A DNA stretch of 64,000 bases from Setoptus koraiensis. Lineage: Eukaryota; Animalia; Arthropoda. Numbering within the stretch: position 1 is the first letter of the stretch; every line of letters starts with the position of its first letter. Location of the stretch: positions 4,154,001-4,218,000 of the forward strand of contig CM106586.1 in assembly GCA_048013815.1 (NCBI GenBank), in the 5' to 3' direction. Of this stretch, positions 2,466 to 57,618 are shown one piece after another. The notes below the pieces were generated by a model. It was not told where the DNA came from. It searched no databases and saw nothing but the letters and a program-made list of their open reading frames with translations. A program made the position numbers and the translations under genes.

Positions 2466-4471
2466 GGCTGTAATAATAATGTAACGATGTAATAATGACG
2501 TAACAATAATAATGTAATAATTATGATGTATATCTAATAATTGTTTACCTTTTTTTGGCATAATAAAGCATGCGTCAGGATGTGTGACCAAAGGGCTAAT
2601 CCATCGTGTGTACATGTGCAGTACAAATTTCATCCGCCAGGTCTCGATCTTGACCGGAGCATAAGGATCGCAGTGCACTTTGCTGACAATGAGATAGTTA
2701 GGGCGGAGGGGCAACTTGTGATCTCTTTTGATAGCGCACCACTCCTCTACTGGTGTCGAGCGAGAAAAAATATTCCAATTTAGAAAGGTGAGGCTGAGAG
2801 CGATCTAGACATGAGACCCATTTCTATGAATGGATAGCATCATGAATGGTAATACTTTTCTTCTTCATGAACAATTTGTAGAAATTACTTCCTGGAAGAG
2901 TGACGCTATTGTGGGAACGGAATGAGGCATCATGGTCTGTCTGGCCAAATTCAAACAGAACTGAGCCTGGCAAGGTTGAGCAAAGATCGAAAGGGTGTCA
3001 TTCCCATCATCAGGGGAATGGTTACATTCTGGGGATTGAGACATCTCCGACAGCTCTGGTATCAGGCTGAGATTCAAGATCCCGTCTGAACTGTAAAGAC
3101 ACACAAAGGATAAACGTCTGTGTGTCGGAGTGAGCGAATCAAAAGAGAAAATCCACTTAGGTACAATCTGGATCAGGATGGATGTTTGTTGGGTTATAAC
3201 CGCCATTGAGGCGTTTTGTTGCTTTGGGCCGGGCGATCGGTCCTATCAGTTTGAATTTTTTAGTTTTGTTTTTCTTTTTCATTGAAAACTACAAGGCCAA
3301 AAATTTCCATTTAGACGCGTTCTTCCAATGGAGATTCCATGTACCCAGGGCGTGCTAATTTTCACAATACAATCGTTTCAAACAACCATTAGCTCTATCA
3401 TATAGGACAAACGACAAGCTTTCTTCTTCCAAAATGGCTAGGGTGAAATTTTTCACTAAATGCAAAGTAATAGTGTACGTGTAAAATCGAGCACGACCTA
3501 GATAAGAGCAGATTGTGTGATACGGAATCAACCAGAGCAAAGTAGCTTCCTTTAAAAGCTATCATTTCTCCAACTCGAGTACTGTTAGGTCCCTGCATTG
3601 GGTCCCAGATAAAATATCGGCTAGCCAGACTCACTTTATCTAATATGCATGTCAAGAGATAAAGAAAAGTCCAACTATGACTTTGGACGCTGATATCAGG
3701 ATATTTGGTGTTGCTTTTTGACTTTTGATCTGGTTGAATGCCGGTGAGCAGGCACTGATAGCTTTTCCACTCGATTAAATTATATAGAGTTCGATTGATA
3801 AAATCAATCGAGCTCACATAGTTAGGGCACATTGCGACGGTTGAACTAACGCAAACAGTGCGGCCAGCGCAAATGGATTTTCGCCTCAAATGACAATAAT
3901 GACATTATGTAATAAATGCAACTCAATGAATATACGCTGTTTGTTGTTGTTGTTCTTCTTCTGGTGCAAATCAACAAAATTCATATTAGACTTGATTACG
4001 TCCATTTAAATCATCGCCCATTAAGATGCGCCCTTATTTCGTCTCAATTTATCGCCAGTTATGCAGATAACGTTCGCGTAGATAAGACAAGTCAATGGCT
4101 AGAAGACGAGGCTGGAAAATCGCTGCACTAGACAATTTTTCCTTGTGAATTTCGCCCAGGGTTCACTGGGTTCTTTTCTGGGAAACATAAAATAACCCTC
4201 ACGCTGAATCGATATAATGTTGCCTTGTTAGATAACAAGATCGTGACCGCCAATATGGGAACTTTCGCGGTTTGATGTCACCTTGAACATCATCGAGACG
4301 TTGACTGTCGCAGTAAGGCTATTTATATCACAAAAATACTAATTTTGTGCTCATGAATAACGAGTAAACACATTAAGACTGCCACTCGTCCTTTACATAT
4401 ACATATACATATACATGATGATAAATGCAATTTATTTATTACTAATTTAAGTTTTATCAAGCACCTTCAAA

Positions 4472-9497: not shown

Positions 9498-13715
<4,218 letters not shown>

Positions 13716-54421: not shown

Positions 54422-55507
54422 TCACTCCAGCCTTAACAACTGCAACATTCGCTTCTCGTCCAAGCCGGGCTCCACATTTTCACTAATTGACGTAGGTGGT
54501 ACTGTAGTAGTTGATTGGTGTTGTTGTTGATTAAAATGCTGCAATAGAGTGGACAGCATTTCCTGCTTGCTTCTATCCATTGTTGGTTGTAAAAATTTGT
54601 GCTTCCTAATTGATACATAACGCAAATCTTCACTATCGGCCGCACCCAATCTCTCATCGGGCTCCAATTTTAACAAACATTTGACTAGATCTTTAGCTTC
54701 CATATCGAACTCTGGGGGAAATTGAATATCTAATTCCATAATCTTTTTATAAATTAAATATTCGTTTACAGCGCTAAATGGTAACGCATTCGTCAACATT
54801 TGATATATGATGACACCTAATGCCCATAAATCTGACTTGTTCGAGGCGGAGCGACTTTTCAGCATCTCAGGCGACACGTATTGTGCCGTACCTACAAATG
54901 AGTTTTTCCTATCGGTTGTTGTTGCTTGTGGTGCCGGTGTGTCTCCGTTAGTATTATTGTCTGTTGTGCCAACTGGATAGACCTGGGCAGATCCAAAGTC
55001 CGTTATTAGTATATTCATTCTTTCGTCTAATAAAATATTTTCTGGCTTCAAATCTCTGTGGACAATACCTAGCTTGTGCATATGCTCTAAAGATTCAATG
55101 ATTTGCAATGTATACAAGCGAACGACATCCACGGGCAATAGATCTTGTCTAGTGATAATAGACAATAGTTCACCATTTTGCGCATAGGTCATTACAAAAT
55201 ATAATCGTTCACTATCCTGAAAGGTGCAATACAATTTCAAGAAATGTTCATTGGGATGGTCGTTGAGAATGTTCATTATTTGCTTCTCCCTCATAATTGC
55301 CAAATGTTTTCCCTGGCGTCTGATGTGCTGCTTCTGGCACACTTTGATGGCATATTTTCTGATGTTACTATCTGTTTTATCTACAATTGTTGTTTCCGTT
55401 GAAGGCTGGTTGGCGCTAATAGCCAGATAAACAGATGAAAAGGAACCTTCGCCGATAAGTTTTAGAAATTTATAATCAGTTGGGCACTTTTTCTTCATAC
55501 TAAGCAT
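54422..55507 (-). CDS. PDPK1: 3-phosphoinositide-dependent protein kinase 1; kinase domain only, no PH domain seen
   Basis: GEGSFS, YAIK, LYCTFQDSERLYF, HRDLKPENILL, DFGSA and NSFVGTAQYVSPE (PDK1 activation loop), plus the post-kinase EPGLDEK motif, then TGA. Single exon. Confidence 0.9.
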   Translation of the reverse strand: MLSMKKKCPTDYKFLKLIGEGSFSSVYLAISANQPSTETTIVDKTDSNIRKYAIKVCQKQHIRRQGKHLAIMREKQIMNILNDHPNEHFLKLYCTFQDSERLYFVMTYAQNGELLSIITRQDLLPVDVVRLYTLQIIESLEHMHKLGIVHRDLKPENILLDERMNILITDFGSAQVYPVGTTDNNTNGDTPAPQATTTDRKNSFVGTAQYVSPEMLKSRSASNKSDLWALGVIIYQMLTNALPFSAVNEYLIYKKIMELDIQFPPEFDMEAKDLVKCLLKLEPDERLGAADSEDLRYVSIRKHKFLQPTMDRSKQEMLSTLLQHFNQQQHQSTTTVPPTSISENVEPGLDEKRMLQLLRLE

Positions 55508-55533
55508 AATACAACGCTTTTATTAAATGTCTC

Positions 55534-55995
55534 TGTATAGTATAATGTGTATGATACAAGCTCGATGGATAGATATTTGCAATTGTTGCTACCTGAGCGT
55601 ATTGTTGTTGCCTTCCTCTATCTGTATCTTGGGGTTTATTTGTTCAAGGTAAACAAGTCATCAGAGGATAAATTTATAATAATATACGTCGATATATCGG
55701 ATGGCAGGACCAAGCGACCAAGGCACAAAAGCACCTCCGCAGCACAGCACCACAGAAAATCAGCTGAGAAAATGCACTGTGAAAGGCTGCGTAGCATCTG
55801 TGAAAACTCGGTTGTTCGGTCCTGCCACCCGATATATCGACGTTTATTATTATGAATTTATCCTCGGATCACTTGTTTACCTTGAATAAATAAGCCTGAA
55901 AATACAGGCAGAGGAAAGCAACAACAATACGCTTAGATAACAACAATTGCAAATATCTATCCATCGAGATTGTGTCATACGCATCATAATATACA
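55534..55995. repeat. Long imperfect inverted repeat (189-bp arms, 84-nt spacer) between the divergent PDPK1 and PPIL2 genes
   Basis: Arm 55534-55722 is the reverse complement of arm 55807-55995. Manual alignment shows no indels and 25 mismatches in 189 (~87% identity), 19 of them transitions. Confidence 0.93.
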
Positions 55996-56004
55996 TTAGA
56001 TATC

Positions 56005-57618
56005 ATGGGCAAAAAGAACAAGCATTCCAAGGATCAGCTCCATCTAACTGTTTCCGAGCTAGGATCTAGGCACGTGGGTCCAGATAAAGATTTGGAATTG
56101 TCTGTCAAGCATAGGCGCTTAAAATACTACTCATGTTGCCTCACTCTTAATCCTTTGGTGGATAAACCCCTTGGTTTGTGTGACAACGATGGATTTTGTT
56201 ACGTGTTCAATTCTGGCAAAGTTGTTGCTTTCTTAGAAAAGTTCCAAGTGCACCCAGTCACAGGAGAAAAGATACACAAATCAGACTTGATCGAACTTAA
56301 GTTCCACAAAAATAATGATGACAAATATCATTGTCCTGTTCTTTATAAGACGTTCAATGAAAATTCTAAAATAGCAGCTAATCGAAAAACCGGCCATGTT
56401 TATTTATACGAGGCGATACAACAGCTCAACTTAAAGACTAAGAATTTCAAAGATCTCATAACCGATGAACCATTTCAGAAGGACGACATAGTCTTGATTC
56501 AGGATCCTGAGAAAGCTGATTCCAAGTGGGACGCATCCAAATTTTATCATGTGACAAATCGATTGAAAATAGTCGACGATGACAATGGCAGCACAATTAG
56601 GAATCTCAATTATGAACTCAAGACTTCCTTAGATGCCTACAATAAGAATGCCGCCGATATAGCAAAAAATTTCTCTAGAATAGTCAATGGCGAGTCCACT
56701 TCTTCAAATGTTACTACTGCAACTCAGATGGACAAATTCAATACAGCAAATTATTCGGATGGGAATGTTAGTAGAGCTGTCACATCAACTATTGCGCCAG
56801 CAGCTACAAAAACTCAAGCAGCTGAACTCACAGAGGAACAAATAATCTACCCCAGAATAAAGAAAAAAGGCTATGCACAAATAGTGACTAATTTTGGACC
56901 TCTGAACATAGAACTTTACTGTGATAGGGTTCCCAAGACTTGCCATAATTTTTTTTTACTTGCCAGACGAGGCTATTACGATAACTGCATCTTTCATAGG
57001 CTAATAAAAAATTTTATCCTACAAGGAGGTGATCCGACAGGAACTGGATCTGGTGGTGAATCAGCTTGGGGTGGTACATTCAAGGACGAATGCCATGGAG
57101 ATCTCAAACATTCTGGTCGTGGAGTGTTGGCTATGGCTAACTCTGGACCGAATACCAATAAATCACAATTTTATATCACTATGAAAGGATCTTGGCCTCA
57201 CCTAGATGGAAAGCACACCGTCTTCGGGAGAGTTGTGGGAGGAATCGAAACATTGATCAAGATTGAGCAAGTTGAGGTAGACAAAAAGGATAGACCTAAA
57301 GAAGAGATTAAGATCTTGCAAGTATTAAGGTATGAGGATCCATTTGAAGTAGTTGAGGAACAGATAGCCAAAGAGCGTCAAGAACGACTGGAAAAAGAAA
57401 AGTTGGACAATGAAGAAAGAGAAGTCGAAGCGAAGCTTGCCCAAAGTAGTCAACCAAAAAAGAAGTTTCGTTCTGGTGTGGGAGCTTTCATCAATCTGGA
57501 GCTGCTGCACGGAAACTCATCGGGCGAGTCCGAGTCCTCCAAACCAGCCCCTATCAAGAATCAGAACGGAACTCCAAGCAGTTCGAGTAAGAACTTTGGG
57601 GATTTTTCATGCTGGTGA
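56005..57618 (+). CDS. PPIL2: RING/U-box E3 ligase and cyclophilin PPIL2 (Cyp60), intronless, 537 aa
   Basis: N-terminal U-box-type region (CCLTLNP, HPVTGE, KYHCPVLYK, DLITDEPF...IQDP). Cyclophilin domain FHRLIKNFILQGGDPTGTG...AMANSGPNTNKSQFYIT...LDGKHTVFGRV. Typical GVGAFI and FGDFSCW C-terminus. Confidence 0.95.
   Translation: MGKKNKHSKDQLHLTVSELGSRHVGPDKDLELSVKHRRLKYYSCCLTLNPLVDKPLGLCDNDGFCYVFNSGKVVAFLEKFQVHPVTGEKIHKSDLIELKFHKNNDDKYHCPVLYKTFNENSKIAANRKTGHVYLYEAIQQLNLKTKNFKDLITDEPFQKDDIVLIQDPEKADSKWDASKFYHVTNRLKIVDDDNGSTIRNLNYELKTSLDAYNKNAADIAKNFSRIVNGESTSSNVTTATQMDKFNTANYSDGNVSRAVTSTIAPAATKTQAAELTEEQIIYPRIKKKGYAQIVTNFGPLNIELYCDRVPKTCHNFFLLARRGYYDNCIFHRLIKNFILQGGDPTGTGSGGESAWGGTFKDECHGDLKHSGRGVLAMANSGPNTNKSQFYITMKGSWPHLDGKHTVFGRVVGGIETLIKIEQVEVDKKDRPKEEIKILQVLRYEDPFEVVEEQIAKERQERLEKEKLDNEEREVEAKLAQSSQPKKKFRSGVGAFINLELLHGNSSGESESSKPAPIKNQNGTPSSSSKNFGDFSCW

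What the first reader, a model, noticed from the sequence alone, without database searches (positions are those of the whole stretch)
55534..55995. The PDPK1/PPIL2 divergent promoter region is a 462-bp mirror-image palindrome
The 497-bp gap between the two ATGs is almost entirely two 189-bp inverted arms (~87% identical, no indels) around an 84-nt spacer. The arms end 27 nt from the PDPK1 ATG and 10 nt from the PPIL2 ATG, so each gene is preceded by a copy of the same upstream sequence. Of 19 transitions, 10 give G-U pairs on the + strand and 9 on the - strand, so there is no one-strand wobble bias. This favours a DNA-level inverted duplication over a strand-specific hairpin RNA. Hypotheses: (a) a bidirectional promoter created by inverted duplication, letting one gene (perhaps the truncated PDPK1) acquire its neighbour's promoter/5'UTR; (b) a domesticated fold-back/MITE element (no clear target-site duplication seen); (c) a cruciform or long-dsRNA source if transcripts start across the spacer.
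Basis: partly seen in the sequence, partly recalled or inferred. Interest (0 to 1): 0.78.

Follow-up and report, generated by a model that had tools for sequence, protein, structure and literature searches.

The report
Mirror-copied gene leader around a mobile-element-like core
In a tiny gall-mite-type genome, two unrelated essential genes that sit head-to-head are each preceded by the same ~160-190 bases, because one gene's upstream DNA was copied in mirror image around a small dispersed element; it is real, but one more case of a rearrangement that recurs in this genome.

Summary
Arms 55534-55722 and 55807-55995 are 189 nt each, with 25 mismatches (19 transitions), no indels and an 84-nt spacer, and they fill the 497-nt gap between the PDK1 and PPIL2 start codons. 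The arms occur nowhere else in the 48.7-Mb genome. Both strands fold equally well and G-U wobbles split 10 to 9. This is a DNA-level inverted duplication, not a strand-specific hairpin RNA or a dispersed foldback element.

Two points are new:
- The spacer is not anonymous. It is a 136-nt copy (55697-55832) of a dispersed, TA-flanked element with inverted ends, here called X. X's 26-nt core occurs 58 times in the genome against 0 for a control. The mirrored unique flanks (161 nt each) start exactly at X's ends.
- Both genes keep their native start codons. The short PDK1 without a PH domain is clade-wide, so it has nothing to do with the palindrome.

Best reading: a fold-back copy primed on X's own inverted ends gave both genes the same putative promoter and leader. 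Which gene was the donor, and where transcription starts, remain unknown.

This scan had already noted at least 15 mirror-duplicated divergent promoters elsewhere in this genome.

The parts
54422..55507 (-). PDK1 (3-phosphoinositide-dependent kinase 1) gene, 361 aa, no PH domain. The clade-conserved start codon is at 55496-55498; an extra in-frame ATG lies at 55505-55507.
   Evidence: Pfam Pkinase, E = 5e-58. Best solved-structure match is the human PDK1 kinase domain, E = 8e-71. Twenty orthologues align end to end and start M(M)KKK. Single copy in the genome.
55534..55694 (.). Left mirrored flank: 161 nt of locus-specific DNA, the outer part of the left arm. Read towards PDK1 it has the same sequence as the right flank read towards PPIL2.
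   Evidence: No other copy in the genome.
55697..55832 (+). Element X: a 136-nt copy of a dispersed element with inverted ends, bracketed by TA (55695-96 and 55833-34).
   Evidence: Genome matches to the spacer. The ends align with other copies as (T/A)AGGGTG...CACCCT(A/T), each flanked by TA.
55761..55766 (.). CAGCTG (E-box-type palindrome), within 1 nt of the symmetry axis. The same motif sits upstream of the core in copies L041 and L043.
55772..55797 (+). 26-nt conserved core of element X. It differs from the family consensus at 2 positions.
   Evidence: 58 genome hits at up to 3 mismatches (30 forward, 28 reverse, 12 perfect), against 0 for the reversed-pattern control.
55826..55836 (+). 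CACCC + GATATA box: a degenerate copy of the family's CACCCTATA end box, pointing to PPIL2. Its mirror image at 55692-55706 points to PDK1. These are candidate TATA-type boxes.
   Evidence: 17 family copies have the core followed by 32-34 nt and then CACCCTWTA, at rigid spacing. In this copy the spacing is 30 nt.
55835..55995 (.). Right mirrored flank: 161 nt, the outer part of the right arm. It carries an upstream ATG at 55852-55854 (a 13-codon uORF if transcribed). The left copy lacks it (ATA).
56005..57618 (+). PPIL2 gene (U-box/Rtf2-type RING plus cyclophilin), 537 aa, with its native start.
   Evidence: Pfam Pro_isomerase and Rtf2. Residues 2-537 align to human PPIL2 residues 2-520, E = 9e-137. 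Single copy.

Best explanation
The PDK1/PPIL2 gap is an old, local, DNA-level inverted duplication of non-coding DNA built around a small dispersed element (X). X is 136 nt, has about 26-nt inverted ends and is flanked by TA. The 161 nt of unique DNA next to one end of X now also lie, flipped, next to the other end. That 161 nt is the upstream and leader region of one of the two genes.

Most likely origin (inferred): a break or stalled fork at one end of X. The exposed strand folded back on X's own inverted ends and copied the opposite flank almost up to the neighbouring start codon. The new end was then joined just upstream of the other gene's ATG. That gene's proximal promoter and leader were replaced, while both coding starts stayed intact.

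How it works now (inferred): each single-copy gene is preceded, at about the same distance, by the same CACCC-TATA-like box and about 140-170 nt of leader. The two genes share one asymmetric central element (E-box plus 26-nt core). The two mRNA leaders would then be alike in sense, not complementary, so no dsRNA is expected from normal divergent transcription.

The copies have since diverged by 13% (about 0.146 substitutions per site between them, Jukes-Cantor). Mismatches are spread evenly, so there is no sign of ongoing gene conversion. The complete lack of indels suggests that spacing in both copies is under constraint.
For: Structure (shown):
- Arms, mismatch spectrum and absence of indels.
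- The arms occur only here in 48.7 Mb.
- Similarity stops at the arm ends and does not enter either coding region: flank-only alignment scores 15 against a shuffle mean of 17.
- Both proteins have native, clade-typical starts and are single-copy.

The centre is a family member (shown):
- The spacer matches three other loci.
- The core has 58 hits against 0 for the control.
- Core-to-box spacing is rigid in 17 copies.
- The end boxes occur as outward-facing pairs: 13 (-,+) pairs 114-641 nt apart, against 1 inward pair, among the first 100 of 291 hits.
- Ends flanked by TA in 5 of 5 units inspected.
- Chance that one of about 58 cores falls in a given 84-nt spacer: about 1e-4 (my arithmetic).

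Against insertion of the whole 462 nt: it would leave only about 35 nt between two divergent ATGs. Divergent ORF gaps in an unbiased 200-kb sample are 107-5040 nt apart from one -2, and the median intergenic distance in a related mite is 538 bp (PMC7738191).

Constraint: five other inverted repeats of this genome show 21 gap openings per 71 mismatches. That predicts 7.4 here; 0 are seen, Poisson P about 6e-4.

Recurrence: I re-confirmed earlier leads as real inverted repeats. L003 (693 nt, 96.8%) and L006 (121 nt, 81%) lie between head-to-head ORFs; L007 and L008 are also real.

Mechanism: fold-back and template-switch inverted duplications primed on short inverted repeats are established (PMC3907307, PMC11724301, PMC10766183).
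Against: - No RNA or transcription-start data, so promoter and leader function of the arms is inferred from position only.
The event is therefore not polarised: the donor flank is unknown, and the 'before' state has not been seen.
- The order of events is open. X could instead have inserted into the central TA of an older palindrome.
- The indel test rests on only five heterogeneous comparison repeats.
- The upstream k-mer survey (58 genes) was too small to define promoter motifs.
- An unbiased 200-kb block had 0 mirrored promoters among 19 divergent ORF pairs, so the design is rare per gene pair.
Confidence: 0.65

Rival explanations
1. Reverse order of events. An older inverted duplication first made a palindrome of about 324 nt with almost no spacer between the two genes. 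Element X later transposed into the TA at its exact centre. Today's structure and function would be the same; only the origin differs, and X would play no causal role.
For: With X and one TA removed, the two flanks meet as ...CGATA-TA-TATCG..., a perfect AT-rich palindromic target. TA-flanked elements of this kind insert at TA. From memory, Tc1/mariner-type elements favour palindromic AT-rich sites. Most other mirrored promoters checked in this genome (L006, L007, L008) have no X-family unit, so the duplication process does not need X.
Against: It needs a long palindrome with no spacer as an intermediate, and such palindromes are known to be unstable (PMC8053094, listed). It also needs the insertion to hit the exact axis. 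A second palindrome (L003) also holds an X-family unit in its spacer, which fits either a causal link or a shared preference for promoters.
Confidence: 0.25
2. The whole 462-nt unit is a single-copy relic of a foldback or MITE transposon with 189-nt inverted ends. It inserted between the two genes and now supplies both promoters.
For: The outermost bases (TGTATA.../...TATACA) contain TA dinucleotides. A palindromic TA target duplication would be hidden inside the repeat, so it cannot be excluded. The centre does belong to a mobile-looking family.
Against: The outer 161 nt of the arms has no other copy in the genome, even at E <= 10. Removing the unit would leave about 35 nt between two divergent start codons, with no room for promoters. 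In the family, the terminal boxes mark element ends, yet here they lie inside the palindrome.
Confidence: 0.05
3. The palindrome is kept because it acts as a nucleic-acid structure. Either a long hairpin RNA is processed into small RNAs, or a DNA cruciform acts as a regulatory or replication signal.
For: Either strand would fold into a stem of about 190 bp, -278 and -281 kcal/mol, z about -30. The absence of indels and the excess of transitions (19:6) would preserve a stem better than random change.
Against: There is no strand bias in wobble pairs, 10 vs 9. Normal divergent transcripts would each hold only one arm, and the two leaders would be alike in sense. No Rfam family matches. No other genome site matches the arms, so there is no obvious target. 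13% mismatch already weakens cruciform extrusion.
Confidence: 0.07
4. Assembly artefact: a chimeric fold-back read was built into the contig.
For: None specific. Palindromes are a known artefact class in long-read assemblies.
Against: Artefactual fold-backs are near-identical copies. Here the arms differ at 13% of sites, with a natural-looking spectrum spread evenly. The unit lies 4.2 Mb inside a 24.5-Mb contig, between two intact single-copy genes.
Confidence: 0.02

Closest known systems
Fold-back / template-switch inverted duplications (short inverted repeats prime copying of the adjacent DNA; PMC3907307, PMC11724301, PMC10766183)
   Same: Two inverted copies separated by a single-copy spacer. 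The spacer is bounded by a pre-existing short inverted repeat (here X's 26-nt ends). The duplicated DNA starts exactly at that repeat.
   Different: The known cases are large human copy-number variants, yeast break-repair products of 5-34 bp, or amplicons. This one is a fixed, old, 161-189-nt event inside a promoter, between two essential genes. The seed is the terminal repeat of a mobile-looking element. The mechanism is inferred here, not observed.
Mirror-duplicated divergent promoters and 're-headed' genes noted by this scan in the same genome (e.g. eIF1/YTHDF, NEDD8/STAG, PAN3/Sirt1, PNPT1/eIF3g, DAD1/akirin)
   Same: Same genome, same head-to-head setting, same kind of locus-specific two-copy inverted duplication of upstream DNA. 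I re-confirmed L003 and L006 as such.
   Different: In most of those notes the copy includes the donor's start codon and first 4-33 codons. Here it stops 9 nt and 26-35 nt short of the ATGs, and both proteins keep their native N-termini. This case is centred on a dispersed element; of the others I checked, only L003 has a family unit in its spacer.
MITEs of the Tc1/mariner/pogo (TA-target) kind, and MITE-derived promoters
   Same: The central 136 nt has inverted ends and TA on both sides, has no coding capacity, and has tens of dispersed copies in both orientations and several size classes. Copies lie in gene-upstream regions.
   Different: No autonomous partner was identified. The core and end box are much better conserved than the 18 nt between them, and their spacing is rigid. 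That looks like selection on a bipartite protein-binding or promoter module rather than neutral decay of a transposon. The 161-nt flanks are not part of the element.
Classical bidirectional promoters of head-to-head gene pairs (PMC1487180, PMC2688522)
   Same: Two unrelated genes, start codons 497 nt apart, transcribed divergently.
   Different: Ordinary bidirectional promoters are not long sequence palindromes. Here about 93% of the gap is mirror-symmetric by duplication.

Membership tests
Fold-back / template-switch inverted duplication | Two copies of locus-specific DNA in inverted orientation, close together | tested here: met
   189-nt arms at 86.8% identity; the only two copies in the genome.
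Fold-back / template-switch inverted duplication | Single-copy spacer bounded by a pre-existing short inverted repeat or microhomology | tested here: met
   The asymmetric 84-nt spacer lies inside element X. X's ends are inverted repeats in other copies too (L041, L042, L043, L003).
Fold-back / template-switch inverted duplication | Derived state: relatives carry one copy only | not testable with these tools
The only relative contig reached (L029, 54% PDK1 identity) has no PPIL2 within 10 kb, and synteny is scrambled.
Foldback / MITE transposon (the whole 462 nt) | Several dispersed copies of the arms | tested here: not met
   No further match to the outer 161 nt at E <= 10 in 48.7 Mb.
Foldback / MITE transposon (the whole 462 nt) | Target-site duplication at the outer ends | tested here: inconclusive
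   There is no direct repeat outside 55534/55995. A palindromic TA would be hidden within TGTATA/TATACA.
TA-target MITE (the central 136 nt, element X) | Dispersed multi-copy family, non-coding, with terminal inverted repeats | tested here: met
   58 core hits against 0 control. Outward-facing end-box pairs: 13 against 1 inward. Ends align in 6 units.
TA-target MITE (the central 136 nt, element X) | TA duplication at both ends; an autonomous element with the same ends | tested here: inconclusive
   TA flanks all 5 units seen, but 2 nt is weak evidence. No pair of inverted cores 1-5 kb apart appears in the hit list. No transposase search was made.
Bidirectional promoter | Head-to-head genes with starts less than 1 kb apart | tested here: met
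   The ATGs are 497 nt apart on opposite strands.
Bidirectional promoter | Divergent transcription start sites in the gap; co-expression | not testable with these tools
   No RNA data were reachable.
Hairpin-RNA (hpRNA) locus | Strand-specific preservation of pairing (G-U tolerated on the transcribed strand) | tested here: not met
   10 vs 9 wobbles. Fold energies are equal on the two strands.
Hairpin-RNA (hpRNA) locus | One transcript across both arms; small RNAs; a complementary target | not testable with these tools
   No RNA data. No other genome match to the arms.
'Re-headed gene' class of this scan (start codon captured from the neighbour) | The copy includes the donor's ATG and first codons, and the recipient has lost its native N-terminus | tested here: not met
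   The arms stop before both ATGs and no similarity lies beyond them. PDK1 starts like 19 orthologues. PPIL2 aligns from residue 2 of the human protein.

The most novel reading that the evidence does not exclude
Element X and its relatives are both a portable two-part promoter (conserved 26-nt core, rigid 32-34-nt gap, CACCC-TATA end box) and a trigger of local fold-back copying. Breaks at their inverted ends would make the host copy one flank onto the other side. In this streamlined mite genome, that would be one general route by which neighbouring genes come to share mirror-image promoters and, when the copy runs further, borrowed start codons.
Probability: 0.25. Interest if true: 0.7.

Novelty: new variant of a known kind. 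Interest (0 to 1): 0.5.

Why it matters
[quoted passage not shown] How genes keep working promoters through rearrangement in such genomes is an open question.

This locus shows two essential, single-copy genes (PDK1, a kinase of growth signalling, and the spliceosomal PPIL2) running on what is largely one upstream sequence used twice in mirror image. It adds a concrete mechanistic lead that the other cases in this genome lacked: the symmetry axis sits on a small dispersed element with inverted ends.

If that link is general, it connects mobile-element ends, fold-back repair and promoter sharing. It would also predict co-regulation of otherwise unrelated neighbours.

As a single locus without RNA data or an outgroup, it is a solid but modest finding.

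Tried and rejected
- **Synteny in relatives.** The event could therefore not be polarised or dated.
- **Genome-wide survey of head-to-head pairs.** The unbiased 200-kb block had 19 divergent ORF pairs and no mirrored promoter. Its single 114-nt inverted repeat lies between convergent ORFs.
- **Two earlier leads.** L004 and L005 showed no inverted repeat at my blastn sensitivity.
- **Promoter-motif discovery.** From 58-59 upstream regions I found only AT-rich (TTA)n and (TA)n tracts, too unspecific to place transcription starts.
- **Known RNA families.** Nothing at E <= 1 except noise. Element X does not fold better than shuffles on either strand, so a small-RNA gene was rejected. A Pol III snRNA-type promoter reading was also rejected, because nothing is conserved beyond the box and no snRNA lies nearby.
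- **PH domain for PDK1.** Not found downstream. This is explained by clade-wide loss.
- **ORF 55547-55855 (102 aa) across the left arm.** No family match.
- **Literature.** Searches for the core sequence returned only unrelated primers. The published gall-mite genome paper does not mention inverted repeats or promoters.
- **Donor direction.** I first took X's orientation (core towards PPIL2) as showing that PPIL2 was the donor. I dropped this once X looked like a mobile element rather than PPIL2's own promoter.
- **Not relevant here.** No contig was taken for human, and no spliced model was needed.

Full report
**1. What is there**

The window is part of a 24.5-Mb contig of a 48.7-Mb, two-contig genome. 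Earlier notes of this scan, and the protein matches, place the genome among the tiny-genome gall (eriophyoid-type) mites. It is not human.

On the minus strand, 54422-55507 encodes a 361-aa protein kinase. Its best solved relative is the human PDK1 kinase domain. On the plus strand, 56005-57618 encodes a 537-aa PPIL2 that aligns from residue 2 to the last residue of human PPIL2. Both genes are single-copy in the genome.

The 497 nt between the two start codons is almost entirely an inverted repeat. The repeat tool gives 210-nt arms at 83%. Base by base, 55534-55722 and 55807-55995 are 189 nt each, with 25 mismatches, 19 of them transitions, and no indel. The wobble count is 10 vs 9 on the two strands. 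Either strand would fold to about -280 kcal/mol, z about -27 to -30. No comparable inverted repeat exists elsewhere in the 64-kb window.

**2. What it is not**

- *Not a dispersed foldback element.* The arms match nothing else in the genome, even at E <= 10.
- *Not an assembly artefact.* The arms differ at 13% of sites, evenly spread: my count in nine 21-nt bins gives a dispersion index of about 0.8. The unit lies deep inside a chromosome-scale contig between intact genes.
- *Not a known RNA*.
- *Not a coding duplication.* Similarity ends at the arm ends, and the flanks beyond them align no better than shuffles.
- *Not connected with PDK1 being 'truncated'.* More than 40 orthologues from related mites (340-450 aa) also lack the PH domain that spider, tick and insect PDK1 carry. 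Nineteen of them aligned with this protein share both its start, M(M)KKKxxxDYKF, and its end. The conserved start codon is therefore the ATG at 55496-98, 36 nt from the arm. The shortening is ancient, whereas the palindrome is young enough to be 87% identical in non-coding DNA.

**3. The centre is a copy of a dispersed element**

Searching the whole gap against the genome at a loose threshold gave three extra hits, all to the 'spacer'. The best-conserved part is a 26-nt core (window 55772-55797). It occurs 58 times at up to 3 mismatches: 30 forward, 28 reverse, 12 perfect. The reversed control pattern occurs 0 times.

In 17 copies the core is followed, after a rigid 32-34 nt, by CACCCT(A/T)TA. 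The first 15 or so of those nucleotides are conserved and the next 18 or so are free to vary.

CACCCTATA occurs 291 times genome-wide, against 171 for its control. Among the first 100 listed hits there are 13 outward-facing (-,+) pairs 114-641 nt apart. There is only one inward pair and one same-strand pair.

In all the units I could read (L003, L042, L043 and the window) the ends align as TA|(T/A)AGGGTG ... CACCCT(A/T)|TA. The interiors are poorly conserved.

This is the anatomy of a small non-coding TA-target element with inverted ends. I call it X. One subterminal block of X is unusually conserved.

X does not fold better than shuffled sequence on either strand, and no small-RNA gene lies beside it. 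The conserved blocks are therefore more likely protein-binding DNA. Where genes are recognisable, X lies upstream of them. In L043 it sits in the 582-nt gap between head-to-head acyl-CoA dehydrogenase and UFD1 genes. In L042 a box lies 135 nt before an ORF start.

From memory only, the reverse complement of the core resembles the Staf/ZNF143 site, which is linked to bidirectional promoters in vertebrates. I did not test this.

**4. Revised anatomy**

In window coordinates:

| Coordinates | Feature |
|---|---|
| up to 55498/55507 | PDK1 start codon(s) |
| 55508-55533 | 26 nt unique |
| 55534-55694 | left mirrored flank, 161 nt |
| 55695-96 | TA |
| 55697-55832 | X, 136 nt (ends 55697-55722 and 55807-55832; CAGCTG at 55761-66, within 1 nt of the axis; core 55772-97) |
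| 55833-34 | TA |
| 55835-55995 | right mirrored flank, 161 nt |
| 55996-56004 | 9 nt unique |
| 56005 | PPIL2 ATG |

The repeat runs through these three parts in one register. The chance that one of about 58 cores lies in a given 84-nt spacer is about 1e-4.

**5. How it arose (inferred)**

Insertion of the whole 462 nt would leave about 35 nt between two divergent start codons. Divergent ORF gaps in an unbiased 200-kb sample run from 107 to 5040 nt, apart from one -2. The median intergenic distance in a related mite is 538 bp (PMC7738191). The flanks were therefore duplicated in place.

I favour the following sequence of events:

1. A break or stalled fork occurred at one end of X.
2. The free strand paired on X's inverted ends and copied the opposite flank outwards.
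3. The extended end was joined close to the other gene's ATG.

This is the established fold-back or template-switch route to inverted duplications with a spacer (PMC3907307, PMC11724301, PMC10766183). It explains why the mirrored DNA starts exactly at X's ends.

The alternative order cannot be excluded: palindrome first, then X jumping into the central TA of ...CGATA-TA-TATCG.... Which gene donated the flank is unresolved.

A second palindrome of this genome, eIF1/YTHDF in locus L003, also carries an X-family unit in its spacer, though off-centre. Three others I checked do not.

**6. How it probably works (inferred)**

Read towards its gene, each arm begins with a CACCC-(G)ATATA box, followed by an AT-rich tract of the (TTA)n type. 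That tract type is over-represented upstream of ORFs in my small sample. About 140-170 nt then run to the ATG.

The simplest reading is that each arm supplies a TATA-type box, a transcription start and a leader. The asymmetric centre of X is shared. The two leaders would be the same in sense, so divergent transcription would not make dsRNA.

The arms have no indel. Five other inverted repeats of this genome show 0.30 gap openings per mismatch. That predicts 7.4 here; 0 are seen, P about 6e-4. This suggests that spacing matters in both copies.

Small asymmetries exist. The PPIL2-side copy has an upstream ATG (55852-54, a 13-codon uORF) where the PDK1-side copy has ATA.

One alternative gene model is not excluded. 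Both arms carry an inward-facing AAG|GTAAAC, and both ATGs are preceded by TTAG. Interleaved leader exons with leader introns are therefore conceivable, and only RNA data can tell.

**7. Context in this scan**

This scan had already noted the same kind of structure on other DNA of this genome: at least 15 mirror-duplicated upstream regions of head-to-head genes, most including the donor's start codon. I treated these notes as leads.

- L003 (693-nt arms, 96.8%) and L006 (121 nt, 81%) are real inverted repeats between divergent ORFs.
- L007 and L008 are real inverted repeats.
- L004 and L005 were not detectable at my sensitivity.

The present locus is the mild end of that series: non-coding DNA only, both proteins untouched.

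**8. Limits**

X was therefore characterised from four loci plus pattern counts.
- No RNA, read-level or sister-species evidence was available.

**Verdict**

The feature is real and well defined. It is best explained as a fold-back inverted duplication of a promoter and leader around a mobile-element-like core. I rate it a new variant of known processes and of moderate interest. The central element family is the most promising lead.

Noticed in passing
window 55697-55832; also L041:1490-1620, L042:1500-1575 and 1614-1908, L043:1459-1583 and 1618-1911, L003:2320-2611: A dispersed element family ('X') with ends TA|(T/A)AGGGTG...CACCCT(A/T)|TA and a 26-nt subterminal core. The core has 58 genome hits against 0 control, and sits at a rigid 32-34 nt from the end box. 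The ~18 nt nearest the box varies. It is either a MITE or a portable two-part promoter.
   Followed up: partly
L043:1351-1934 (genome C1:8.80 Mb): The 582-nt gap between head-to-head acyl-CoA dehydrogenase and UFD1 genes holds two X-family units side by side. The second carries an inverted copy of the core 128 nt from the first. Four CACCCT(A/T)TA boxes lie in the gap, one of them 31 nt before the UFD1 ORF's ATG.
   Followed up: partly
L003:2320-2611 (genome C2:4.094 Mb): The spacer of the eIF1/YTHDF palindrome (arms 562-1238 and 2678-3370) contains a 284-nt X-family unit with exact outward-facing CACCCTATA boxes, 67 nt from the right arm. This is a second palindrome associated with the family.
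   Followed up: partly
window 54422-55507 and proteins P0001-P0044: PDK1 without its PH domain (340-450 aa) is shared by more than 40 related mite sequences, including Aceria tosichella. Spiders, ticks, oribatid mites and insects keep the PH domain (PF14593). This looks like a clade-wide loss of phosphoinositide binding by PDK1.
   Followed up: partly
window 55645-55659 and 55870-55884; 55996-55999 and 55499-55503: Both arms carry an inward-facing splice-donor-like AAG|GTAAAC inside a 16-nt perfectly conserved run. Each start codon is preceded by TTAG. Leader introns with interleaved first exons are conceivable, but untested.
   Followed up: no
window 10000-42000: A 30-kb stretch at 51-63% G+C lies between flanks of about 40% G+C. 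It contains a 1405-aa ORF (9498-13715) and few other long ORFs.
   Followed up: no
L015:6918-7495 (genome C1:4066918-4067495): An inverted repeat with 114-nt arms at 83% and a 354-nt spacer lies between two convergent ORFs. It is MITE-like and is not a promoter palindrome.
   Followed up: no
genome C1:12483303, C1:23597928, C2:5353018, C2:9292914, C2:16907427: Five X copies are identical over the 56 nt from the core to the box, and use the CACCCTTTA variant. This is either a recent burst of one subfamily or a duplicated gene family carrying it. The variable segment contains a tRNA B-box-like GTTCAAATCC.
   Followed up: no
L029 (plant-metagenome contig, 107.8 kb) and L030-L032: Contigs of related mites carry PDK1 with entirely different neighbours. 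No gene of the 64-kb window other than PDK1 recurs there, so gene order is scrambled at this distance (54% PDK1 identity).
   Followed up: partly
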